A stretch of DNA of 38,578 bases from Lenisia limosa (lineage: Eukaryota; Protista; Breviatea): NCBI GenBank assembly GCA_001655205.1, contig LPNZ01008646.1, positions 1-38,578 of the forward strand, given 5' to 3'. Below are positions 4,901-33,900 of the stretch, piece after piece. The notes below the pieces were generated by a model that was given only the letters and a program-made list of their open reading frames with translations, did no database searches and was not told the origin of the DNA. A program made the translations under genes and the position numbers. Numbering within the stretch: position 1 is the first letter of the stretch; every line of letters starts with the position of its first letter.

Positions 4901-5867
4901 AATGGGGTTGGGGAAGGGGGACAATATTGAGGTTTGAGCTGAGAAGAAAGGTAGCCTTGGCTGGAGGTTAGAGGGATCTTCCATCATTGTGGTTAATGCA
5001 TGTTGCTTCTTGCTGAGTTGATTCAGCTTTCGCTCTCTCTTGTTTTTTGCTTGTTGTGTTTTGCGAGTGTGGTGTGATCGATCAGTGTTTTCGTTTGTTT
5101 ACATCCAAGCACATCCAAGCATCCAAGCATTTGGCAAAAAAGGAAACTTTATATAAATGTAACAAATGTAATAAATGTAACAAAAGATGATGTTTGATTT
5201 GGCACCCTAGGGGTGTATAATGGGGGAGGTTTAATTTTGGTTCTCATTTTGGTGAACGTGCTATCAAGGGGGGGGGAACTCCATAGAAACATGGCTCCTC
5301 CAAGCAATCACGGCGGATCGCGGATCGCTATGGAACGTGGATAAGTGCTGACGTCATGACGTTATGTGATGAATTTATGGTGTGGTACAATATCGTTATA
5401 TCTGGGGGTCTGGGCAGTCTGGGCTACCAAACCACCCATGGCGGATCGCGGNNNNNNNNNNNNNNNNNNNNNNNNNNNNNNNNNNNNNNNNNNNNNNNNN
5501 NNNNNNNNNNNNNNNNNNNNNNNNNNNNNNNNNNNNNNNNNGACACGTATTAAAGACGGCGGTTAACAGACTATCAAAACAATTGATGAACTCTTCAAAA
5601 GACCTTGTGAAACTGTACATTTTCTCAACAAATAAGAAATGGGTATCTTAACCCGTCACTCTAGCATTTTCTTCCCTCTTCCGAATATGATCATGATCAT
5701 TGGTCTGGATGGTTAGTTTTTGAGATATTAGCACCTCCCCCCCCCCCCAGTTNNNNNNNNNNNNNNNNNNNNNNNNNNNNNNNNNNNNNNNNNNNNNNNN
5801 NNNNNNNNNNNNNNNNNNNNNNNNNNNNNNNNNNNNNNNNNNNNNNNNNNNNNNNNNNNNNNNNNNN

Positions 5868-8800
5868 CGTGGGGTAGGACAGAATGGCGTCAGAAATGGT
5901 CTTGCGCGAGGCTGACAGGTTGTACTATAATCGGTAAATAAGAAAACAGCGAACTGCAAGAATTCGAGTATTTATGCTTGCTAAATGGTACAGATCATGA
6001 TCTGAGGAAGCAATTGCGCCTCAAACCTTGATGTAGTTTGCTGGTAACTTTTTATTCTGAAATGTCAAGAACGGCAAATAAACGAAATGTAAACAATAGG
6101 TTGAATTGTTGCTGATAAACAGTTTATGTTTATATTGGGCACATTTAAAGATGTTCTCAGGTTTAAATGTACTCCTCCATGAACCCATCTTGCTTGAGAT
6201 TTTCCGTGCCTACCCTGCCTGAACGTGCTGACAGGAGCTCCAAAGCAACCAACGAGCCGAATGCCTGGATAGACGTGAGGGGAATACGAAACAAACAACG
6301 CCAATACCCGAACTTATTGTCGGAAAATAAAAGCCAAGAGTTTGCTCCATAGCTTGCATGCATCTGGGGCTAAGGTTTGTACTTCACCACCCCATTATAA
6401 CCTCAATTTACTATCCCTGACAACCTTCAAAGCAATGTCTCGGGAAAACGAGCCGATAGTGGAGCCTCTCCCAACTCCCGAAGCAAAAGCCGAATACTCC
6501 ACAAATGCCATCTAATCGTGATGAGTGGAACATAATACTGAAATGGGATATGACAAATTAAAGTTTTCATCAGAGTTACGTTACTATGTTGATGATATTC
6601 ATTTTACCCTGATTTCCTTCATCCAATAGTATACTATGGTATCATATACTATTACCCCCAAGAAACAAGGTAACTGACCTCGAAATTGAAGGATTCAACG
6701 TCCTTGTTGATGAGGCGAGTTGAAGCAACCAAAAGCGCCAATTCAAGAACAGACAGGCCTAGAGGGGGGGGGGNNNNNNNNNNNNNNNNNNNNNNNNNNN
6801 NNNNNNNNNNNNNNNNNNNNNNNNNNNNNNNNNNNNNNNNNNNNNNNNNNNNNNNNNNNNNNNNNNNNNNNNNNNNNNNTTTTTCACGCCTTTCCCTCCC
6901 CTTTTACAGTTGATTGACTGTGTGATGGTATCTGCAAACGTGACGCTGATGCCAGCAACTATGTGTCCAATTTGCAAGACCGGGCTTGTTGGTGATAACT
7001 TCGAAATGGCCACATCCTTAAGCAGTCAAAACCATCTAAGAAATCGACATTTATTCTCCCATTTAGCATCTCATAAATATCTTCTCCATTTAGCATTTCA
7101 ATATATTAATCATGTTACGTACTACAAGTATCATATATGATGATATGAATATTACAACGTTTCTCCCCACCATGATATCGATGAATGTTCTGAATGTGTT
7201 GGCCCGGTCAAAAACGGTCTGCAGTCTGCGTCGTGTAGGCAAATCTCCCATCATTTCCTTGTAGATTATGATGTGTGTGTGTGGGGTAGGGGGGATAAGA
7301 ATATAAACATCAAGATCAAGGGCGTATTTGAGAAATCCTGCTAACTAAAAAAGGTCAAAGAATCAGAGCAGGAGTTTGTACATATCGATAAACAGTTGAG
7401 CTAACAGGACCAGAGTTAACTCCTCTCACAGTCACACTCTTGCTGTAAGCCTCGAGGAGAGAGGACCCTTTGACGGGCACTTGGAGAAGCGGCTCAAGGT
7501 CCAACCTACAATGTGTCAGATCTGAACTGTTTCTGCTACCAAATACAACCTTCCCCCTTCTGGTTTGGCAAAATACAAACACAAAGGGAATCTAGAACTT
7601 TTGCAACTGTTTCTGATGCAATACGCCTTGAATTTCGGATCAGACATGACATAATCTAAGAACTCACATTAGCTCCGAAAGGGTCGCATGAGGCTCAAAG
7701 AAGAACTCTCGGGGTGAGAAGCGCGAACGCACTCGTTTCTCTAACATTTCTAAGACATTCTAGGGAATTAGAGTCGAAAGTAGAAGTGCATTAAAAAATT
7801 GCTGTCGGATACTTTAAAAAAACTAAAACGAAAATAGAGGACATGTGTTATAAATTATCTCACCAATTTGGCAGAAATAGCAATAATGACAGCTTTGGCC
7901 TGGGAGGAGTGCAAAATATCAAAGAGATTGTAGAGAACATTCTGGTTTGTGTGGAGCGCAAATTGTTCGAAAGATTCAATTGTGAATACTCTGGAGGAGT
8001 TGTGTGAGTGATAAATGATAATTGATACAATAACAGGAGAGATGGTGCCTACACAGTGTCTGTGGAATGAAGTACCGATTTCAGAAGGCAGTTCAGGGCA
8101 TCAGCGAAACTGGTCTGAAGTGTCAATGATAGTGTTTTCACATTGTGTCTCGCATCCATCCAAAATAATTGGAAGACTACTACTATTTATCAAAGATATT
8201 ACTAATCCGCTATTCTGACATCTTTGAATACTGCACGCGACAATGTCAACAACAGCAAGAGAAGCTTACATATTTTTCACTGTTGTTAACCGAAAGTTGG
8301 TGTGCAATCGAACGGAGTGCAATCCTGCCCGTTGTCTACAGGGTCATCTTACTAAGCAATTGCAAGTAAACATAATACGCTAAATGGGAAATTCAAACGT
8401 ATTCATATTCAATCTATTCAAATAAATTGGATATCGATATAAACCGAACCAATGCAAAACCCTCAAACATCTCTGAGACCATCAAGTTGCACTACTTTTA
8501 GTTTCTTGGATTTTGTCACTGATTGGGCCTGTGAGGGTGACAGTTGGCCAGAATGAACAATGTCACTAGGACCATATTGGTTTTTCTTAGATGTAAGAGT
8601 ACACCTTATTAGAGTTTCATTGACTGCCAAAAGGAAGCTTACCTCATCAATAGCAGCAGCAACAGTGGCTGTTTTACCTGTTCCTGGAGCGCCTAAACAG
8701 AGAATACTGGCAACCTCACCGTGCTTGATAGCCCGGATTATTTGGTCTTTAATGTTCCTAAGGTATAAGAATCTACAAAACAACCATGGGAATCAAGCAG

Positions 8801-10192
8801 ACCCCCCACTCTCTTGTAGGTTTGAGGTGCTCTGATCGGGAGGCACCTGACACCAGGCTGCCTCTAACAAACGTCTGTAGACAGCGAACGCTGCTTGATC
8901 GATAAGCCGCCTGCTCAGCCTCATCAGTTATGCCTGAAGCCTGGAAACATAAACAGCAGCCAACATGATGAAAGAGTCCAGAGATAACTCATACCATAGA
9001 TGGTGTATGAGTCCAGAGATAACTCATACCATAGAGTATATATATCTAGATATATATATTACTTGGAAGATCAAGATAATGAGTTTATTGCAAAGCAAAA
9101 CTAAGCCGCCCACCTCTTCATCCATTTTCCGAGCCAGGTCAAGAGTGTCTTCTGAGGGGCGCGGGGTGGAGAGGGGACGGAATCCGACCTGTACTTTGGC
9201 CACAAACTCCATTGGTGCAATATTCTGAGTGGATTCTGGGGGAGTAAAATTGGAAAATTTAAAAACNNNNNNNNNNNNNNNNNNNNNNNNNNNNNNNNNN
9301 NNNNNNNNNNNNNNNNNNNNNNNNNNNNNNNNNNNNNNNNNNNNNNNNNNNNNNNNNNNNNNNNNNNNNNNNNNNNNNNNNNNNNNNNNNNNNNNNNNNN
9401 NNNNNNNNNNNNNNNNNNNNNNNNNNCGCATCGAAAACCACACTATCAACGAAGATGATCAAGGAGTATCATCTAATCCAAATTTGCCAGCCTACCAGCG
9501 TCGGGGTCAGAGTCTGGGTCACTATAGTCCTCATCAAACTCGTTATCAGGATACACCTGCACTGTGGGGCTTGGAGGGGCTTTGATGGTGGCTTGCTTTG
9601 AGGGTTTTGAGGGTGTTTTTGCCTGAGGTTTTGAGGGTGGTTTTGCAGGTACTTTGGCGGGTGGTTTTGCCTGTGCCTTCGAGGGAGTCTTTGTGGAAGG
9701 TTTTGGAAAGGCATGTGCTGGAAACTTCGCTGGAGGGATTTTGGGTTTGGGGGTCGATTTGACAGGGGTCTTTTTTGGAAGCGGACGTCTTGGCGAGACA
9801 ACAGTATTTGTCCTGTTCGTGGGAGGGGGTGGAGAGCTATCGATTTCATCAAAGTCATTGACGTTGCCAGCTGGTTGCGGCTTGGATGGCGGCGTGGTCT
9901 TCGTTGTTACCTTTGATGACTTTTTTGCAGGTGCTAAAACAGGCTTTTTCGAAGATGCTGGCTTTTTTGCAGGTGTTGAAACAGGCTTTTTCCAAGATGC
10001 TGGCTTTTTTGCAGGTGTTGAAACAGGCTTTTTTGCAGGTGCTGAAACAGGCTTTTTTGCAGGTGCTGAAACAGGCTTTTTTGCAGGTGTTGAAACAGGC
10101 TTTTTTGCAGGTGTTGAAACAGGCTTATTTGCAGGTAGCTTGTTTGCGGGAGTAGGAGGCTTCTTAGCCTTCTCCCTCGAACGAGTAGTCAT
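5868..10192 (-). CDS. ORC4: Origin recognition complex subunit 4 with long basic N-terminal extension; last exon lost in an assembly gap; start at 10192 or up to 10411
   Basis: Exons encode IIRAIKHGEVASILCLGAPGTGKTATV (Walker A, 8670-8693), FALHTNQNVLYNLFDILHSSQAKAVIIAISAKL, NVLEMLEKRVRSRFSPR, LGLSVLELALLVASTRLINKDVESFNFE, AFGSLVALELL and TISDAILSYPT. These match the ORC4 signatures HGESNSVLIIGPRGSGKT, NQTLLYNLFD, LEKRVKSRFSHR and LSVLEICLIIA. Upstream exons 10192-9496, 9235-9114, 8940-8810 and 8757-8643 are phase-compatible (1,0,2). Confidence 0.88.
8974..9035. repeat. Two-copy intronic tandem duplication (period 35) in ORC4
   Basis: gagtccagagataactcataccataga at 8974 and 9009. Confidence 0.85.
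9925..10135 (-). repeat. Coding minisatellite, ~24-bp unit encoding KPVS[TA]PAK
   Basis: Plus-strand unit aaacaggcttttttgcaggtg[t/c]tg is repeated about 7 times with variants and translates on the minus strand to seven PAKK motifs. Confidence 0.9.
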
Positions 10193-10472
10193 GACATTTT
10201 CCTCTTCTTGAGTCTTCAGAGCCCGTGTGCTGCTCCTTCGCACTTTCGTATCCAGATCAGGATACAACACTAGGCGCGGATCTCTATGGAATTTATGATG
10301 TTTCCTTTTGACGGAAGGAACTGCTGTTTTATCTAAATAATGAGGCAAAGGAATCAGTGCAGCTAAAAATACTGAGATTAATGTAATTCGAGTGTGATTA
10401 CAAAAAACCATAACAAAATGGACTTTTCATTGAGCACAATGTTGTTCAAACAGTGTTAAAAATCATCCAATG

Positions 10473-10516
10473 TTATATTTGGGTAATATATATATATATA
10501 TATTACCCAAATATAA
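10473..10516. other. 44-bp perfect palindrome with (TA)n centre in the divergent ORC4/repeat-gene intergenic region
   Basis: ttatatttgggtaata-(ta)n-tattacccaaatataa is self-complementary base for base. Confidence 0.85.
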
Positions 10517-11165
10517 AGTGAACATTTGAAATTAATTGTGAAACACTTAATGAAGAAACAAAAATAAAAAGAATGTTACTACTGACATTTGGGTCTCTGT
10601 ATTTTACAAATAACAAGATCAACAGTATTGAATTAACATGAATGCAAATCAAAAATAATTGTCATTAAACAATTTCTGTCCACAAAATTTAATAACTCCA
10701 ACAATCTCCACTCAAATCCATACTGGAATCAATTTTTAACGTGCAAACTTGATTTACAATAAACAGTCCTATGTTCACCCACCATTATTGGAATTAGAAG
10801 CATTCATTTTCTTCAAAAATAAGTAACTTCTTACAAATTAATCTTATTGTCTACTGGTTTCACAGGCTTCAGAGAGCTACAATTGCAGGAACTGAGATCA
10901 TTGAACAGAGAGAGAAAAAAACAATCTTGATGATCGCGGCTTCATTTCAGAGTATATGTAGAAGAAGAAAAATAAATCTATCTATGCATGTAGGAAGAGA
11001 GGGTTTTGTCCAGTGGTCCAGTGGCTGTCCAGTTTCCATCCAATTAATACAATTGCCTCCGGAGTATAAATCCAAATTCCCCTGACCCCGGGTATGCCCG
11101 GGTACTTTGAAAGTGTAAAAAAATAACACTGAAAAAACTGAAACAACATCTACTATACAATAATC

Positions 11166-13001
11166 ATGCCTATGGAACGTACCCAGACTGTTGCCTTCAC
11201 CCTTCCCGCTGATACCAAGGAAGTGAAGGTTTGAAGACCCCCTTATTTCTGCCAGTTCTAACACTGAAATGTCTAGAAACACTAAAGCGTATTAGTTTAA
11301 TGCATTTCAGAGGAATCTTTTATTTACACCGGTACAGGTCGACTCCCCTAAGGCCGCCAAGGCTGTTAGCCGCGCACGTACTGCCATCCAGACCCGCGCT
11401 ATTGTTGCTGCTAAGGTTTGCCTCGTGTTTGGTTACTCGCTCGCCATTCCTGAATTATTTGGGCGGACTCTTCTATCATCTGATCGTGAACCTTTACCCT
11501 GTGGCTATTTGATGTGATCCTATTTTGATTATATAAGGAGGAGGCCGAGATTGAGGCTAAGATTGCAGCCATGAAGCGTGAGCGTACTGCCATCCAAACC
11601 CGCGGACTTGTCGCTGCCAAGGCCAAGGAGGTGGTTGGGAAGTATGAAGGAAGCGATACGGGTCCCAATAATATAAAGCAAAGTGACTGAATGCATTTAT
11701 CTGGGTTCTTTTTCATATTAATACAATGTTAGCTAAGAGGTTCTCACCCCCCCCCCAGGAGGAAGATGCCCTTGACGCCAAGCTCGAGGCTCTCAAGCGC
11801 GAGCGTACCGCTATCCAAACTCGTGCCCGCACCGCTGAGAAGGAGGCCAAGGAGGTGGGCATTTGGTTTCGTTGTTGGTGACTTGTTTTTCTTTTTTCAA
11901 TCTGGAGCCGTAACATTTCAGCACCAAGATATTTTTGTACTTAGCTAAATTCTACTCGGGAGGTGGATTTTGCTAATACTTTTTTATCTCCATTTAAGAG
12001 GCTTTTACCTCTCTTTATTACATAACGTTTGAAAACAGCGTCAGGCTTGTATTTAGCTCCAAAACACCCAGAAATAGCTTTGTACAAAATGAGCTAAATA
12101 CAGCCATGTGCTAAAATGTTACGGGCTCCTGGGTTTTTGTTGGCTGTTGTTTTTTTATGGATCTCTGACTGTTTGCTTTTGTAACAATTCAAACCCCCAC
12201 AATGCTGTTATTTTGACATCGGTAGGAGGCTGAGGCTATGGAAGCTGAGGAGGAGGAAGTCCCCGAGGTATGTCGGTGGATTTTTCAATTGAGCCTCAAA
12301 TTTCACTAATTGTGTAACTATGCCTTCTAATACCCTACCATTCTCTGGTATGTGACACGGTTTACTTTGGACCAGATGAACGACGAGGAGGCTGAGAAGG
12401 CTGTTGAAGAGGCTGACAAGAAGATTGAGGCCCTTAAGAGGGAGAGAACCCAAATCCAAACCCGTGGTGTTGTGGCTGCCAAGGAAGAGGTGCGTGTTAA
12501 TATACTATATCATATCATATGTATGTTAATTCTATATATCGCACTATTAGATTAGTCCTTTTTTTTTTTACAGGCCTCTTCCTACATTATCCATCACCAA
12601 AAGCATCGTTAACACACCCACCAGGCTGACTTCGAGGCTAAGATCAACGCTCTTAAGCGTGAGCGTACCCGTATTATGACCCGTCATGCTGCTGTTGAGA
12701 AGAAACAGGTGTGGGGTACTTACGGTCTTTGCTTTCCTGGAACGTTAGTTATTCTGAATCGCACAATTACCTAATATTGCATCAGGAGGAGAAAGAGATC
12801 CGCAATGCTAAGCGGATGAACCGCGAACGTACCCGAATCCAAACCCGCAGCCAGACTGAGGTATGCCGAGACTGCTTCCTTTCCACTAAGGATTTACTTC
12901 GGAACATATCGGAAATATCGGTTAAAGATCTCGAGAGGGGGGGTGAACTTTCATACGTTTTGCTCTTTTCAATTGTCTTTTTACAGCTACAGAAGAAATA
13001 A
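11166..13001 (+). CDS. Orphan ~219-aa repeat protein, 9 exons, six R[EA]RTxI[QM]TR repeats
   Basis: Exons 11166-11228, 11338-11415, 11538-11630, 11759-11854, 12226-12267, 12376-12489, 12625-12708, 12786-12860 and 12987-13001 are all GT-AG and all phase 0. They join into an open frame ending LQKK-TAA, with strongly biased codon use (aag, gag, cgt, acc). Confidence 0.85.
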
Positions 13002-13145: not shown

Positions 13146-16100
13146 TTACATTTTGGCTTTTGGGCAAGTTGTGCACTTGCGTTTTGCCTGGGGGGTGACT
13201 CAAACTTAATTTGGGAAGAGAATTGTTATCTATAGTGTTCAAACCTGAATAGCCTTGATTTTGCGATCAATACGCTCTCCATAGTCCTGGTCGATTTTGT
13301 AGAAGAGGGCTGAGGGGGTCATTTGGAAGAAGAGGGTATGGTACAGTATAGAAATATTCTAGTTTTTCAAGGCCCTTCTCACCAAGCTGTCTATCAATGA
13401 TGTACTGTTTGGCGTTGACAAGGTGGCCTGCCAGGTTGTCAGTCAAACGGTCGCGGTGCGCATCATCAAGGACGTTGCGATAGAAGTCTGCAGGCTGCTC
13501 GAAGTGGTCTTCGGCCTCGTCAGTCCAGCGGTCCACGTCTCCTGAGGCGGTTTCTCTTGGCTCGGCCGCCTCCACCGAGGGCATGTGGCCCTTGAATGTG
13601 CTCGGATGGTAGTTGGGCGCCCCATCTGCGTGTCAGTATTCTCAAAACAGACGCTCCAATACCCGATCCCCCCGCTGCCGCCCCCCTTTTTTGGTGATAC
13701 TCCTAAATCGTACGATTGATATAGCAGTTTCCGCTGACCAATCACCACCCGCACCATTGTATGTCGGGCCGGAGGTCATGGGGCCGTCACGTTGGGTGTT
13801 GGCTACCTTGGCGCGATAGGGGCAGTTGATGGGCAACTGGTGGTAGTTGGCCCCGATCTGGTGAGTTAACTGATGTTTATTATGATATAGCTGCCTGATT
13901 CAGCACCATTTTTCCTGACATGATCTGAACACATCACCCCTGGCAAACTCTATGAACGTGGGTGTCGCTGTATGAGAATAGGCGGCCTTGGAGCATTTTG
14001 TCGGGAGATGCAGTGATGCCTGGTACCTGCGAGATGATTTGGAACGTTTGCGCTAGTGTCACTCATTTGGAAACACAAAAAGTATGATCAAAATCTCAAT
14101 TCCCTCCAACAAAATGACCAGGAGAAAATGCAGCCTGCTCAACCTCCGCGAAATAGTTCTTTGGGTTCCTATTCATTACCATGGTTCCAACAGGACGCAG
14201 TGGATACTCCTTGTGGGACCATACCTGCCAGAATAACAGTAATTCTACTCAAATGGTATGGAATGTGAGAATGGGGCTATAATTCACAGCATCGATTCCC
14301 AGCAGACCTTAGTCAGGTCAAACGGGTTGAACTTGAATTTGGATGCTTGTTCGAACGTCATAACCTAGGCTATGAAAAGGGGGCGATTTGTAAGCCCATC
14401 CTCTTTTATTTTATGATCACTGCAGTTTATCAATGACCTTTGGATAATATATGATATGCTAATCGATAAACATAATAGGTCTATTTTGCTACGTGTTTGG
14501 ATACTGCATGGTACACTCACTTGGACACTGAGTTTCCACTCGGGGAAGTCGCCCCTTTCAATAGCCTCGTAAAGGTCACGAATGGCATAGTCAGGGTCGG
14601 ATCCGGCCAACTGTCCGGCTTTTTCAACAGAGAGTGTCTTCCATCCTCCCTAACAATGTTAGCCGGAACATTTCGAATCGACCTTCGTGGCACACAAGAC
14701 AATGTCTTTCTCAACAAGTTACCTTAGGCTTGAAGTGATATTTGACGTAAACGCTGTTTCCGGATTCATTCGTCCATTTGTAAGTGTGTGAACCGTAACC
14801 TGTGTGAGTCAATATCATATCATCCACAAGGGCACTGCTATGACTATATATCAAAATAGTCACAGTTAATATAATATCAACAGTTCGGAAATTTGGCTGT
14901 TATCTCTTGATGACATTGTGTACTTAAACAATTACGATGGAAACGAACATGGATGATATAGTATCTGATATCATATCATATATAATAAATATACTATCAA
15001 ATAATGTTAACATAAGCCCGTACCAGTCATGTGTCTGAATCCGTCGGGAATACCGCGGTCACTGAAGAGGAACGACAACTGAAACCGTCAGAAAGAAAAG
15101 CTGAAATGTATTTTGTTGAGAACATTAATAAATAAATATGATATAAGACTCTAACTATAACAGGCGAAAAAGACACGGTTAATACCTGATGAAGTGATTC
15201 GGGGCGTTGTGAAAGGAAGTCCCAATGAGCATCCGGATCCTTGATACTGTGGTGCAAGTTAAACAATTGAACAAATGAATAAGAAATTGAATTAACAGAA
15301 TATTAAAATTGCCTACTGGGTGACAGGGTTGCGCTTTTGGGAGTGAATGAAGTTGGGAAACTGGAAGGGGTCGCGAATGAAGAAGACTGTAATATCATAA
15401 TTATCCGAAAGTGAATGAACATATTATTCTATATATGATATATTTCAACAAAAATTGTCCACTCTGCTCAACAACCAACTTACCTGGAGTAGCATTTCCA
15501 ACTAAATCGAAGTTTCCTTCCTCCGTATAAAACTTAATTGCAAAACCGCGAGGGTCACGAACTAGAGGTGTGAAGAATAAGATGCGAGGGTCACGAACTA
15601 GAGGTGTGAAGAATAAGATGTGAGGGTCATGAACTAGAGGAAGAATAAGATCCTAGCTTTTCACAATATTCACAAAGCATAATTTGGGGGCAAGAACCCA
15701 CGGGTATCTGCGCTTCCGAGTTCACCAGCAACAGTGGAAAAACGGCCAAACACAGGGGTTTGCTTCCCAATCTGAAAGTGTGATATTCAAGAAAAAGAGA
15801 CACATTAATATCATTAGGATGCCAGAATGCTAGCGAAAACAAGGTCAAGCCATACCCCTTGAAGGAACTTGGCGCGACAGATATCAGATACATCGTGAGT
15901 CACCACAAAGTGCCCATGAGCTCCTCCTCCTGACAAGTTATAAGAGTCAGCTTACACCGTTTTTACCCAACCCAAATTGTTATCTTTTTTTATAGCACCA
16001 ACTATGTTACAGTGATAAGAATACTTTCAAGTTGTATTGTGATCAAAAGAACTGACTGCACAACACGCTACTCACCCTTAGCATGCACAACACGCTCGGG

Positions 16101-30900: not shown

Positions 30901-33900
30901 GGACTTTATACGGATCAGATATTCCATGCTGTATCTCTCATTTCCAAATTCCGAACATATTGAGTCAATGGTTGTCTCCTTCTTCTCTTGCTGTAGAAGC
31001 GACTGGCCTGGACTTTGTTTGTTTTGTTGTTATCAACCCTCATGTGTTACCAGCTAACAGAGTTGATTTGGGATTTTTTTTCATAAATTGTCCAATTTTA
31101 CTCCCCTCCCCCCAGCCAACCTGCTCCTCTGCAACCACGTGACCACCCTGTCACTGGAGGGGAACGCTCTCCTTCCCTCCGATGATGAGGAGCTACGGAA
31201 CCTTGTTGACTTCTTTGCAGCCGAGGAGGCCGGGAAAAGTTGGTGGATCCTTTCCTCATTTAATCATGCTGCGATGTGTAAGAGTTGTATTATACAGATG
31301 GATATTATATGTTTCCTGTTCTGTATTCGACAAAACTGCTGTAAACCATGATGCCCCCCCCCCCCCNNNNNNNNNNNNNNNNNNNNNNNNNNNNNNNNNN
31401 NNNNNNNNNNNNNNNNNNNNNNNNNNNNNNNNNNNNNNNNNNNNNNNNNNNNNNNNNNCCGTGACACTGGTGGGTTTTGGGTTACATCGTGAAGTGTCGT
31501 GATGGTTGGCTGACCTTCAGAACAAAAAGAATCTGATATACAGTAGTGTGTTTAATGATAGTTTTATTTCAGTTAAAGAGGGACGCAAACAATGATAGCA
31601 ACATAGTTATCCCTTTGTAATTTCGTAAATTAGAAAACATTGTGAAATAAAACAACACGTTATCAGATACAAAACCTCAGTAACAAGTGAAATAAAAATG
31701 ATGGGCAATGCCGTTTTGCTATTAAGGAAAAAACTTTTTCCTATTCCTCATGTCGTGATGTTCACTTCTCAATTGAACAGCAAAAATTAATATGTGATCA
31801 CACTTTTGAGATTGATATGATATTAAGAATCAATAATGAAACGCATATCTTGTGCTTTTTTGTGATATTCGGTGTTTTACCTCCTGTCGCGAGATTGTAC
31901 TAACCCGAGTTCAGCTCCTGACGGGGGTATTTCCTTCGGGTACGGACTTGAGGCCTCTTGTGGACTCTCTCAAGGTCGTCAATATGACATACACCCAGGT
32001 TGGATGAGGAAAGGTAACATCACACTTTCCAGCATATGAAAGTTGTAGCATTTAACGGGAGATAAATATTGTTGAGAAGTTTTTCTTTAACATTCCATTT
32101 CCTTCCCCAAATCTTCCATCACCCCCAGGCCCCGCCCACGCTATTCAGTGTGGCGGCGGCGCAACTCAGCCCCCATGCCGANNNNNNNNNNNNNNNNNNN
32201 NNNNNNNNNNNNNNNNNNNNNNNNNNNNNNNNNNNNNNNNNNNNNNCCCGGTCCGCTCCAGGCCTTCGTGGCCAGTGTCAAGGTATTCCGACTTTTGGGT
32301 AGGGCTTCACTTCGGTAAGAAAAAGACCGGTTAAGATTGATCGAGCTTTTTCGAACCGAAGTGAAGCCCTACGGACTTAAAGAGTTTCGGTAAATCCATC
32401 CAAACGCTCAAGAAAGAAAGTCACTCTCATAGTCTTGCCCTGTGTGCGAACGGAAATTCTTCACCATCCCTCCACGCTTCATGTCCGAGTCCGTAATGTG
32501 GGTGGTGTTGAGGGGCTTTTTCGTGCTTTCTTCGGGTTTAAATAAGTGAATAGGATATGAAGCTATATGATTTGAGGTATGTGATGGTGTGGACGNNNNN
32601 NNNNNNNNNNNNNNNNNNNNNNNNNNNNNNNNNNNNNNNNNNNNNNNNNNNNNNNNNNNNNNNNNNNNNNNNNNNNNNNNNNNNNNNNNNNTACAGAGAT
32701 ACCAAGAAATGTCTATATTTGGTCTTTTTATGACCCATTTCAGTTCCGAGAGCCCCTCGGTCCTCTTTGACGAGTTGGACAACCTGGCTGCTTCCATCCC
32801 CCCGGTCATCAACTCAAGTTGAAGGGGGTAGACTTGTTCTCCTTATTCTAATTTCTCTTAGACAAATAATATTCATGACTTATACAAAACTAATTGCTGT
32901 CTTCTATAATTCATGACTTATATACTACTTTCTGTCTTTTATAATTCATAACTGATATTATACTAATTGCTGTCTTTTTCTTTTTTAACCCCCGCATGGC
33001 GAAATGACAAAAGAGCGGTTCTTTGCTTCACACATCCCGCACCACCCGTTGGAGTGATGGGATGCGGCGGTGNNNNNNNNNNNNNNNNNNNNNNNNNNNN
33101 NNNNNNNNNNNNNNNNNNNNNNNNNNNNNNNNNNNNNNNNNNNNNNNNNNNNNNNNNNNNNNNNNNNNNNNNNNNNNNNNNNNNNNNNNNNNNNNNNNNN
33201 NNNNNNNNNNNNNGTGTTCGGCCAGAGGTACTGGCGTCTTGGGGTCCTGGTACTCGGACCAAGAAAGAGGTGAGAGGGGGCGGGGGGTCTATCGCCAACT
33301 TCCTTCTGTCTTGTCATTTGTGTTGGTGTACTGTACCTCAAGGCATCATAAACCCTCCATTACTCTGCTTTTGCCTTTCTGACTGACCCTATCAGCTCGA
33401 GACGAAGGTCTGGCCTGGGTGGACGGACATCTCAAGCAACAGTCCCGAGTCTGTCTCGGCTGCCACTGTCGTCACTCAAGACACGTCAGTTGTCATCGAA
33501 ACAAAGTGGGGTGGGGTGGGGGGTCCGATAGCCAACTATTCTATTGCACAATTTAAATCCAACTACAAGTGTCCTGGGAGTAAAATTGTCCGAGAAGCGG
33601 GGGGGTCGTGCCCTCTCTGCAGATCTGAAGCTCGATGATCTGTGCACGGAAACTCCCAACAACTATCACTGCATCTTGTCTGTTCATATTTCCATTACTT
33701 GAAACTGACGGTGCAGTCTTGTCTGCAGCCGCACGTGCGCTCTAAAGCCCTTCAATGAGACCCCAAAACTGAAGCGCCCTGCCCCGAACAATGATACGCG
33801 TGAGGGGAGGAAATGAAGGATCAATGAAGAATATTGGCGTGAAGGTACTAATCACGAAGCGAATATTCTGAAACCAAACAAAAAAACTCGCGGGGGGGGG

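What the first reader, a model, noticed from the sequence alone, without database searches (positions are those of the whole stretch)
8643..10411. ORC4 carrying a histone-H1-like (S/T)PAKK-repeat N-terminal extension, a possible convergent analogue of the S. pombe Orc4 AT-hook arm
Seen: the large K/P-rich exon ends in a phase-1 GTAGG donor at 9495, before its apparent stop. It splices in frame (G+AA=Glu) to exon 9235-9114 and on through 8940-8810 into the ORC4 Walker A exon. This gives ~290 extra residues with seven PAKK motifs, at least eight full [ST]Px[KR] CDK-consensus sites (TPAK x4, SPRR, TPVK, TPSK x2) and an acidic end (DNEFDEDYSDPDSD). Established: most Orc4 proteins start shortly before the AAA+ fold, and fission yeast Orc4 is the known exception, using nine AT-hooks to pick AT-rich origins. 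SPKK/TPKK motifs of histone H1 bind AT-rich minor grooves in a CDK-phosphorylation-sensitive way. Inference: this lineage may have independently evolved a CDK-switchable DNA-binding or condensate-forming arm on Orc4, from a still-expanding 24-bp minisatellite and with no GRP AT-hook core.
Basis: partly seen in the sequence, partly recalled or inferred. Interest (0 to 1): 0.82.

Follow-up and report, generated by a model that had tools for sequence, protein, structure and literature searches.

The report
ORC4 with lysine-proline-rich N-terminal arm
In this intron-rich protist, the gene for ORC4 (a subunit of the complex that marks where DNA copying starts) is spliced to an extra first exon that adds about 270 floppy, strongly positive residues resembling a histone H1 tail; this is probably an extra DNA or chromatin grip, which is interesting but not unprecedented in kind.

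Summary
A poly(A) RNA contig joins 9496 to 9235 and 9114 to 8940 at GT..AG sites, so the assembly gap (9267-9426) lies inside intron 1 and does not affect the reading frame. A 17-exon, all-GT-AG, in-frame model gives at least 683 aa. An ORC4 profile aligns to residues 282-682 (246 bits). Exon 3, which the RNA links to the K/P exon, already carries ORC4 homology. The arm is about 274 aa, predicted disordered and about +34 in charge.

New points:
- The arm is two modules, each a basic block followed by N(D/E)FDExxS.
- The RNA-supported start is ATG 10192, not 10411.
- The exon 3 to exon 4 junction is inferred, not seen in RNA.
- One RNA contig hints at a second 5' form.

No homologue of the arm was found, and no close relative's ORC4 was available for comparison.

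Function is inferred: most likely an ATP-independent, possibly CDK-gated DNA or chromatin tether, closest in logic to the metazoan Orc1 disordered region and the fission-yeast Orc4 N-terminus. AT-specific binding is weakly supported, because only one site is a canonical SP(K/R)(K/R) motif. The scan noted an H1-like tail on another protein of this genome (s1-199228, unchecked). I class it as a new variant of a known kind, of moderate interest.

The parts
9496..10192 (-). Exon 1, coding from ATG 10192. It encodes 232 aa of K/P-rich disordered sequence: basic block 1 (res 1-100, pI 11.6), acidic motif 1, basic block 2 (res 126-205, pI 12.0) and acidic motif 2. It ends at a phase-1 GT donor.
   Evidence: RNA contigs cover 9496-9873 and 10084-10193. 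The frame is open in only 0.03% of dinucleotide shuffles. AlphaFold2 gives pLDDT 55, pTM 0.14 and no secondary structure.
9918..10136 (-). In-frame minisatellite with 24-bp units (PVS[TA]PAKK) and 42-bp (24+18) units. It supplies the seven PAKK motifs and four TPAK sites.
   Evidence: TRF reports period 24, 9.5 copies. The repeat finder family D1 has spacings of 24 or 18 nt, with five units 97-100% identical. Contigs do not span it, so the copy number is unverified.
9605..9717 (-). Older, degenerate 12-bp (4-codon) periodic array underlying basic block 2 (KPPA/KVPA/KPPS/KPQA/KTPS...).
   Evidence: the repeat finder family D2: 8 copies, spacing 12 nt, 61-80% identity.
9836..9859 (-). Acidic-aromatic motif 1, NDFDEIDS (res 112-119), directly after basic block 1.
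   Evidence: Regex hit. No composition shuffle (0 of 300) gives such a repeated non-KPAST motif. The DNA is 74% like motif 2 over 23 nt (D8).
9521..9544 (-). Acidic-aromatic motif 2, NEFDEDYS (res 217-224), directly after basic block 2. It is followed by DPDSDPD.
9236..9495 (-). Intron 1 (GT..AG). It contains the assembly gap 9267-9426 and the start of a dispersed repeat at 9239-9266.
   Evidence: The RNA contig skips it cleanly. DNA word depth is 158 against about 35 in the bin 9118-9293. A second copy of the 23-nt repeat end lies at 31084-31106.
9114..9235 (-). Exon 2 (res 233-273), a linker rich in acidic residues. It contains the in-frame Met241.
   Evidence: It is joined to exon 1 and exon 3 in one RNA contig.
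8810..8940 (-). Exon 3 (res 274-316). ORC4 homology starts here, at about res 282.
   Evidence: The ORC4 profile alignment starts at res 282. The exon adds 13.3 bits, against 2.9 +/- 1.4 (maximum 9.0) for 300 shuffled versions. RNA contig 2 covers 8853-8939.
8758..8809 (-). Intron 3, 52 nt, GT..AG. This junction is inferred, not seen in RNA.
   Evidence: The RNA contig of the ORC4 body stops 2 nt beyond 8757, and those 2 nt do not match the genome, so it is spliced there. Frame and homology run on across the junction.
8643..8757 (-). Exon 4, carrying the Walker A motif (GAPGTGKT).
   Evidence: Pfam AAA_16 and AAA hits. RNA contig 1 covers it.
5867..8528 (-). Exons 5-17 of ORC4: 8528-8469, 8335-8270, 8114-8053, 7990-7864, 7759-7668, 7505-7430, 7257-7171, 7016-6908, 6758-6679, 6511-6425, 6264-6214, 6056-6027 and 5924-5867. 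The last exon runs into gap 5756-5866.
   Evidence: All junctions lie in one 1245-nt RNA contig, and all are GT-AG and in frame. Exon 8 matches only ORC4 chains in the PDB (human 5uj7_C, E = 1.5e-6). Exon 13 scores 28.3 bits on Pfam ORC4_C, above the 25.3 cut-off.
10193..10411 (-). Stretch upstream of ATG 10192 that stays open in the same frame. It has no RNA contig support, and whether it codes is unresolved.
   Evidence: It is open in frame in 1.6% of dinucleotide shuffles. RNA depth is zero upstream of 10193.

Best explanation
This is the organism's ORC4 gene.

Shown: its mRNA begins with an extra coding exon that puts about 274 residues in front of the point where ORC4 proteins normally start. 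The arm is intrinsically disordered and has two modules. Each module is an 80-100-residue lysine/proline-rich block (pI about 12, built from in-frame 24-bp and 12-bp minisatellites) followed by an acidic-aromatic motif N(D/E)FDExxS.

Inferred: the basic blocks bind DNA or linker DNA in chromatin electrostatically and independently of ATP. This would hold ORC on chromosomes before the AAA+ ring encircles DNA. It is the two-step logic described for the fission-yeast Orc4 AT-hook domain and the metazoan Orc1 disordered region.

Also inferred, with less confidence: phosphorylation of the eight [ST]Px[KR] sites by CDK lowers the positive charge and releases or weakens the tether outside G1. The acidic motifs may fold back on the basic blocks or bind a partner.

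Confidence by layer: ORC4 with this arm in mRNA, about 0.9. DNA or chromatin tether, about 0.5. CDK gating, about 0.35. A/T-specific minor-groove reading, about 0.15. The overall figure given (0.5) is for the tether reading.
For: - Splicing of exons 1, 2 and 3 is seen in one poly(A) RNA contig.
- ORC4 homology starts in exon 3 and runs colinearly to the C-terminus: 246 bits, profile positions 8-422 of 437. The exon 3 contribution is significant.
- PDB and Pfam hits are ORC4-specific.
- The exon 1 frame is open at p = 0.0003, and all repeat periods are multiples of 3.
- Net charge is +33.6 and pI 10.4. There are eight full CDK consensus sites against 2.2 expected.
- No fold is predicted.
- PAKK tetrapeptide repeats are reported to facilitate DNA binding in histone H1 and mycobacterial HupB (PMC2932737). 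Mycobacterial Ku has related PAKKA repeats that interact with DNA (PMC3553676).
- Basic, phospho-regulated disordered regions tether ORC to chromatin in flies and other animals. The SpOrc4 N-terminus does the same job (PMC11077064).
- The basic composition persists in an old, decayed 12-bp array as well as a young 24-bp array. This fits composition being maintained over time.
Against: - There is no functional data of any kind.
- No homologue of the arm exists in 5.8 billion proteins within the searched length range, or in the Atlas. No close relative's ORC4 was retrievable. Conservation, the main computational test of function, could not be applied.
- Half of the CDK sites are copies of one repeat unit.
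- Only one site is a canonical SP(K/R)(K/R) motif.
- Low-complexity basic tails may be common in this genome (note s1-199228, unchecked).
- RNA depth falls from 13.6 to 7.8 to 4.3 towards the 5' end, and one RNA contig diverges at about 9580. A shorter isoform without the basic blocks may therefore co-exist.
- The exon 3 to exon 4 junction is not directly seen in RNA.
Confidence: 0.5

Rival explanations
1. The arm is real and translated but is essentially neutral low-complexity growth. Replication slippage in a minisatellite inflated the N-terminus, and it is tolerated because it is disordered. At most it serves as a nuclear localisation signal.
For: The youngest units are 97-100% identical at the DNA level, which points to recent slippage. 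No homologue of the arm was found. Another protein of this genome is noted to carry an H1-like tail (s1-199228, unchecked). Canonical ORC4 proteins work without such an arm: the N-terminal overhang has median 0 and maximum 107 aa in 120 animal ORC4s.
Against: The arm has organised architecture. A non-repetitive motif N(D/E)FDExxS occurs twice, each time after a basic block (0 of 300 shuffles). An old, decayed 12-bp array keeps the same composition. Full CDK sites also occur outside the young repeat. In the 38.6-kb window no other ORF has such composition.
Confidence: 0.3
2. Exon 1 is mostly a long 5' leader or belongs to a minor isoform. The working ORC4 starts at Met241 in exon 2 (MEFVAK...), or from another 5' exon, which would give a protein of canonical size.
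For: A start at Met241 would give a protein of about 460 aa, like other ORC4s. RNA word depth halves upstream of exon 4. One RNA contig matches up to about 9580, just after an AG, and then continues with 169 nt that are absent from the window. RNA contig support ends one base upstream of ATG 10192.
Against: The 697-nt exon is open in exactly the frame that joins exon 2 (p = 0.0003). Repeat units are multiples of three. ATG 10192 lies inside the RNA contig. A 3' coverage bias in poly(A) libraries would explain the depth gradient. No RNA contig starts in intron 1.
Confidence: 0.12
3. The link is an artefact: a chimeric RNA contig or a scaffold misjoin across the gap puts an unrelated K/P-rich gene next to ORC4.
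For: The window is a gappy draft scaffold. A high-copy repeat abuts the gap. A DNA contig shows an odd 9257-to-10553 joint.
Against: The RNA contig crosses two exact GT..AG junctions with zero mismatches on both sides of the gap. Its third piece, exon 3, is ORC4-homologous. Exon 4 has no in-frame ATG before Walker A and is itself spliced at its 5' edge. The next gene upstream lies on the other strand. DNA contigs with exon 1 have full depth, 31-35.
Confidence: 0.03

Closest known systems
Schizosaccharomyces pombe Orc4 N-terminal AT-hook domain
   Same: Both are large basic N-terminal additions to the Orc4 subunit, placed ahead of the AAA+ fold. In S. pombe this domain tethers ORC to DNA without ATP before the stable encircling step (PMC11077064, citing Chuang and Kelly 1999 and Lee et al. 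2001).
   Different: This arm has no GRP/RGRP AT-hook core and no Pfam AT_hook hit. It is built from PAKK-type K/P repeats with interspersed acidic motifs and many CDK sites. No sequence relationship is detectable, so any similarity is by convergence. A/T preference is not implied.
Metazoan Orc1 intrinsically disordered region (also Cdc6 and Cdt1 IDRs)
   Same: Both are disordered, basic and lie N-terminal to an AAA+ module of an ORC subunit. Both carry multiple [S/T]P and [S/T]PX[R/K] sites. [quoted passage not shown]
   Different: Here the region sits on Orc4, not Orc1. It is far richer in proline (23%) and strongly repetitive. Whether this organism's Orc1 has its own disordered region is unknown.
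Histone H1 C-terminal tail and SPKK-motif sperm histones
   Same: The K/P/A/S/T-rich composition, the PAKK tetrapeptides and the (S/T)PxK CDK-type sites are shared. Phosphorylation of SPKK serines inhibits DNA binding (PMC9903204, PMC2932737).
   Different: There is no linker-histone globular domain (no Pfam hit). Only one of the eight sites is the canonical SP(K/R)(K/R) motif that prefers A/T-rich minor grooves.
PAKK/PAKKA lysine-rich tails of mycobacterial HupB (Hlp, MDP1) and Ku
   Same: In both cases tandem PAKK-type repeats are appended as a disordered tail to an unrelated DNA-binding core, where they interact with DNA and modify its binding. The authors conclude that such tails evolved repeatedly (PMC3553676, PMC2932737, PMC10810275).
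   Different: Those tails are bacterial, C-terminal, alanine-rich rather than proline-rich, and have no CDK sites or acidic motifs.
Lymnaea stagnalis ORC4 gene model (P0119, 544 aa)
   Same: It has a 107-aa N-terminal overhang ahead of the ORC4 homology with eight SPx[KR] sites. This may be a second, independent CDK-site-rich basic arm on Orc4.
   Different: It is shorter, is not PAKK-repetitive, and has no detectable similarity to this arm. It is an automatic gene model with no relative sharing the arm, so it may itself be an annotation artefact.

Membership tests
ORC4 (origin recognition complex subunit 4) | Full-length colinear similarity to ORC4 proteins (AAA+ module plus C-terminal winged-helix region) | tested here: met
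   A profile of 118 animal ORC4s aligns positions 8-422 of 437 to model residues 282-682, 246 bits. The MAFFT alignment with P0013 and P0017 agrees.
ORC4 (origin recognition complex subunit 4) | Pfam ORC4_C (PF14629) above its gathering score | tested here: met
   Exon 13 alone scores 28.3 bits against the 25.3 cut-off, E = 1.4e-6. The spliced protein could not be submitted whole.
ORC4 (origin recognition complex subunit 4) | Best solved-structure matches are Orc4 chains, not other AAA+ initiators | tested here: met
   All six PDB hits of exon 8 are ORC4: human 1.5e-6, fly 2e-6, yeast 0.11.
ORC4 (origin recognition complex subunit 4) | Walker A GxxGxGK[ST] and the conserved EKRVxSRFS segment, which I recall as carrying the Orc4 arginine finger | tested here: met
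   GAPGTGKT in exon 4 and EKRVRSRFS in exon 9. The link between this segment and the arginine finger is from memory, not tested.
ORC4 (origin recognition complex subunit 4) | Walker B with two acidic residues (D/E-D/E before F) | tested here: not met
   The sequence reads TIESFE where homologues read LDEFD, LEEFD or IDDFD. The second acidic residue is Ser. This is a variation within ORC4, not grounds for exclusion.
ORC4 (origin recognition complex subunit 4) | Assembly into ORC with Orc1-3 and Orc5 | not testable with these tools
   The other subunits are not in the window.
Fission-yeast-type Orc4 AT-hook domain | Multiple AT-hook cores (GRP flanked by basic residues; Pfam AT_hook) | tested here: not met
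   There are no GRP or RGR motifs and no Pfam family on the arm.
Linker histone H1/H5 | Globular winged-helix domain (Pfam Linker_histone) | tested here: not met
   No Pfam hit on the 312-aa ORF at E <= 1. No fold is predicted.
SPKK DNA-binding motif (Suzuki) | Repeated S/T-P-(K/R)-(K/R) units | tested here: not met
   Only one such unit is present, SPRR at residue 133. The repeat is (T/A)PAKK.
Initiator-type disordered chromatin tether (metazoan Orc1/Cdc6/Cdt1 IDR class) | Disordered, basic, N-terminal to the AAA+ module, with multiple CDK consensus sites | tested here: met
   pLDDT 55 and no secondary structure. Charge +33.6 and eight [ST]Px[KR] sites. The arm lies ahead of residue 282.
Initiator-type disordered chromatin tether (metazoan Orc1/Cdc6/Cdt1 IDR class) | ATP-independent DNA binding, chromosome recruitment and phospho-regulation | not testable with these tools
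   This needs EMSA or fluorescence polarisation, imaging and kinase assays.

The most novel reading that the evidence does not exclude
In this lineage the chromatin tether of ORC has moved to Orc4 and is a self-contained, two-module switch. Each H1-tail-like basic block would bind linker DNA. Its adjoining acidic-aromatic N(D/E)FDExxS motif would either mask the block intramolecularly or dock on histones. This resembles acidic-aromatic histone-binding motifs of chaperones, a resemblance I recall from memory and did not test. CDK phosphorylation of the [ST]PxK sites would flip the balance once per cell cycle. This would be an independently evolved licensing control on a subunit not known to carry one outside fission yeast. 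It would matter most if this organism's Orc1 lacks a disordered region.
Probability: 0.12. Interest if true: 0.75.

Novelty: new variant of a known kind. Interest (0 to 1): 0.5.

Why it matters
Recent work proposes that most eukaryotic ORCs need an accessory, ATP-independent chromatin tether, and that evolution has supplied it in different ways: AT-hooks on fission-yeast Orc4 and a compositionally conserved disordered region on animal Orc1 (PMC11077064). If this arm binds DNA, an RNA-confirmed Orc4 with an H1-tail-like, CDK-site-rich arm in a distant protist would be a third, independent solution. It would be on the same subunit as in fission yeast but with the chemistry of the animal solution. 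That would make the 'composition, not sequence' idea testable outside animals, for example by domain swaps into fly Orc1 or S. pombe Orc4. It also shows a tether-like domain being built from coding minisatellites. If the arm is neutral low-complexity growth, the finding is an ordinary annotation detail.

Tried and rejected
- Search for homologues of the arm. The 312-aa ORF against 5.8 billion proteins gave one hit, judged spurious: a 478-aa protein whose only annotated domain is PF01261, unrelated to ORC. The ESM Atlas gave a best score of 0.65, only generic low-complexity nuclear proteins. Nothing usable came of either.
- Search for close relatives' ORC4, to test conservation of the arm. Exon 8 against 1.84 billion representatives gave 18 hits, the best full-length ones at most 54% identical and of canonical size. 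The three giant hits are not ORC4; P0002, the one inspected, is a repeat-built protein. A profile search returned only animal ORC4s among its top 120. No near relative could be reached.
- Spliced protein as a query. It cannot be passed to the database tools by reference and must not be typed, so searches used single exons and a locally built profile.
- Aligning all exon peptides to homologues with MAFFT misplaced several of them. I used only the five cleanly placed exons.
- K/P exon as the tail of an upstream gene: rejected. The next gene upstream (11166 onwards) is on the + strand, and the catalase gene on the minus strand ends at about 13147.
- Gap hiding coding sequence: rejected for the observed mRNA form.
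- Heterozygous deletion of exon 1, suggested by a 9257-to-10553 DNA joint: unlikely. Exon-1 contigs have full depth and a dispersed repeat starts at 9239.
- The two loose-end RNA sequences were searched for in the window and not found.
- The Lymnaea N-terminal arm has no relatives, so it gives no evidence of a conserved animal precedent.
- The organism could not be named. Run metadata are coded, and no long housekeeping exon was available for a name-bearing search.

Full report
**The observation**

The minus strand between 10411 and 9473 is one 312-codon open frame rich in Lys and Pro. Eight codons before its stop lies G|GTAGG, with the last exon base at 9496. Downstream, an AG acceptor precedes 9235, and G+AA restores a Glu codon. 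Exons 9235-9114, 8940-8810 and 8757-8643 follow in frame, all with GT-AG borders. The last of these carries GAPGTGKT.

The only runs found that hold this DNA are a poly(A) RNA library and a DNA library of the same study. Laying their contigs on 5950-11200 gave three informative RNA contigs:
- A 588-nt contig covers 9873-9496, 9235-9113 and 8939-8853 without a mismatch.
- A 1245-nt contig joins every exon from 8757 down to 6027, and continues 201 nt into the exon that begins at 5924.
- A 110-nt contig covers 10084-10193.

**The gap**

The scan's program asked for the gap to be tested first. The RNA contig goes from 9496 straight to 9235, skipping 260 nt with GT..AG ends on the minus strand. The Ns at 9267-9426 are therefore intronic and cannot affect the frame of this mRNA form.

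DNA contigs stop at 9266 and resume at 9427, so the gap is not closed. DNA word depth jumps to 158, against about 35, in the bin 9118-9293. A 23-nt stretch at 9239-9261 recurs at 31084-31106. A high-copy dispersed repeat inside intron 1 is the likely cause of the gap.

**What the gene is**

With the RNA junctions, a 17-exon model is in frame throughout and gives 683 residues. The last residues (about 20, judging from the alignment with canonical ORC4s) fall in gap 5756-5866.
- Exon 8 matches only Orc4 chains in the PDB (human 5uj7_C, E = 1.5e-6).
- Exon 13 passes Pfam ORC4_C on its own (28.3 against 25.3 bits).
- A profile built from 118 animal ORC4s retrieved aligns positions 8-422 of 437 to residues 282-682 at 246 bits.

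Homology thus begins inside exon 3. That exon adds 13.3 bits, against 2.9 +/- 1.4 for 300 shuffled versions.

This matters because the exon 3 to exon 4 junction (a 52-nt intron) is the one link not bridged by an RNA contig. The ORC4-body contig ends 2 nt beyond 8757, and those 2 nt do not match the genome. Exon 4 is therefore spliced to something upstream, and exon 3 is the in-frame, homologous candidate.

The next gene upstream lies on the other strand (also scan note s1-201393). The K/P exon is therefore not the tail of another minus-strand gene.

**Anatomy of the arm**

RNA support reaches 10193, and the first ATG inside it is 10192 (MTTRSREKAKK...). From there exon 1 encodes 232 residues. 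With exon 2 and the start of exon 3, about 274 residues precede the canonical ORC4 start. In 120 animal ORC4s the corresponding overhang has median 0 and maximum 107.

Composition of exon 1 is P 23%, K 18.5%, A 12%, S 11% and T 9%, with net charge +33.6 and pI 10.4.
- seven PAKK motifs;
- eight [ST]Px[KR] sites (2.2 +/- 1.4 in shuffles);
- no GRP.

Four of the eight sites are copies of one repeat unit. AlphaFold2 finds no structure (pLDDT 55, pTM 0.14).

The arm is blocky, in this order:
- basic residues 1-100 (pI 11.6);
- NDFDEIDS at 112-119;
- basic residues 126-205 (pI 12.0);
- NEFDEDYS at 217-224, followed by DPDSDPD.

It is not expected from composition (0 of 300 shuffles), and the two copies are 74% alike at the DNA level.

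Block 1 is a young 24/42-bp minisatellite with five units 97-100% identical. Block 2 is an old, decayed 12-bp array. All periods are multiples of three. The exon is open in the frame that joins exon 2 in only 0.03% of dinucleotide shuffles, which supports coding. No contig spans 9989-10083, so the repeat number is uncertain.

**Relatives**

The arm has no detectable homologue. No close relative's ORC4 could be retrieved. Conservation could therefore not be tested, and the lineage remains unnamed. Scan notes call it an intron-rich, possibly anaerobic protist; I did not check this.

One animal gene model, Lymnaea stagnalis P0119, has a 107-aa overhang with eight SPx[KR] sites. It is unique to that model and unverified.

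**Mechanism**

What is shown is ORC4 with a disordered, highly basic, CDK-site-rich arm in its mRNA. What is inferred is the function. The best-supported reading is an ATP-independent electrostatic tether to DNA or chromatin. Three lines of published work support this reading:
- PAKK repeats are reported to facilitate DNA binding in histone H1 and mycobacterial HupB. Related PAKKA repeats in mycobacterial Ku interact with DNA. The Ku authors conclude that such lysine-rich tails evolved repeatedly on unrelated DNA-binding proteins (PMC2932737, PMC3553676).
[quoted passage not shown] It acts through composition rather than sequence order. Its authors call it the functional analogue of the SpOrc4 AT-hook N-terminus, and they predict further solutions in other eukaryotes (PMC11077064).
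- CDK gating is plausible by analogy with Orc1 and with SPKK histones, where phosphorylation inhibits DNA binding (PMC9903204).

A/T-specific minor-groove reading is poorly supported, because only SPRR fits the SP(K/R)(K/R) motif.

The acidic motifs could mask the basic blocks or bind a partner. The single RPLP next to SPRR is a weak candidate cyclin-docking site. Both ideas are speculation.

**Rivals and loose ends**

Neutral minisatellite growth is the main rival (0.3). The next is that exon 1 is a leader or a minor isoform, with translation from Met241 (0.12). Three observations fit that second rival:
- RNA depth falls from 13.6 to 7.8 to 4.3 towards the 5' end.
- No contig lies upstream of 10193.
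- One RNA contig matches up to about 9580, just after an AG, and then carries 169 nt absent from the window.

That contig could be an alternative 5' exon, a paralogue or a chimera. Conversely, the 219 nt upstream of ATG 10192 stay open in frame (p = 0.016), so the protein might be even longer. An assembly or contig artefact is unlikely (0.03).

**Verdict**

I class the finding as a new variant of a known kind: an accessory basic tether on an ORC subunit. Here it sits on Orc4, as in fission yeast, but with H1-tail or Orc1-IDR-like chemistry and a two-module layout. Interest is moderate (0.5). It is a clean, RNA-backed case that makes a current idea testable outside animals and yeasts, but there is no evidence yet that the arm does anything.

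Noticed in passing
window 7966-7989 (minus strand, exon 8): The ORC4 Walker B reads VFTIESFE where homologues have LDEFD, LEEFD or IDDFD, so the second acidic residue is Ser. Walker A and the EKRVRSRFS segment are intact. This Orc4 may bind but not hydrolyse ATP.
   Followed up: partly
window 10193-10411 and about 10781-10806 (minus strand): The frame of exon 1 stays open for 73 codons upstream of ATG 10192 (p = 0.016). The part after a possible acceptor near 10333 reads like protein (KTAVPSVKRKHHKFHRDPR...). A candidate 25-nt mini-exon (ATGAATGCTTCTAATTCCAATAATG|GTGGGT) near 10806 would join it in frame. No RNA contig supports any of this.
   Followed up: partly
window about 9580 (minus strand, inside exon 1): One RNA contig fits the window up to about 9579/9580, just 3' of an AG. 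It then continues for 169 nt that occur nowhere in the window. Read in frame it gives ...PIEVLKPFRT|PPSPTVQ. It may be an alternative 5' exon giving an isoform without the basic blocks, a paralogue, or a chimeric contig.
   Followed up: partly
window 9239-9266 and 31084-31106: A short dispersed repeat end (GGGGGAGTAAAATTGGAAAATTT) abuts the gap in intron 1 and recurs 22 kb away. DNA word depth there is 4-5 times the single-copy level. It probably explains this assembly gap.
   Followed up: partly
window 9257 / 10553: A DNA contig (depth 23.7) joins 9257 to 10553 with GGT in between, which would remove exon 1 and its promoter-proximal region. Exon-1 contigs have full depth, so a repeat-related artefact is more likely than a deletion allele.
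   Followed up: no
window 6774-6879: The N gap in ORC4 intron 12 is bridged by a DNA contig with 51 letters instead of the 106 Ns, so the gap length is overestimated. It is intronic and harmless.
   Followed up: no
window 5756-5924: The last ORC4 exon (from 5924, YNLSASRKTISDAILSYPT...) runs into gap 5756-5866. The final residues (about 20) and the stop codon are missing from the assembly but are present in the RNA contig, which has 201 nt beyond 6027.
   Followed up: partly
window 8529-8642: Intron 4 of ORC4 is 114 nt long, in frame and free of stop codons. Its retention would insert 38 residues just after Walker A without breaking the frame.
   Followed up: no
window 10473-10516: A perfect 44-nt palindrome centred on (TA)n (TTATATTTGGGTAATATATATA/TATATATATTACCCAAATATAA) lies in the 970-nt spacer between ORC4 and the divergent + strand gene at 11166. 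It may be a shared promoter or TATA element.
   Followed up: no
window 13147-14400 (minus strand): A multi-exon catalase gene of the typical small-subunit kind (VWSHKEYPL..., [16 protein letters not shown]) lies upstream. This is notable if the organism is really anaerobic, as another scan note says.
   Followed up: no
protein P0119 (Lymnaea stagnalis ORC4 model), residues 1-107: This animal ORC4 gene model has a 107-aa N-terminal overhang with eight SPx[KR] sites. No other protein shares the overhang, so it may be a parallel case or an annotation artefact.
   Followed up: partly
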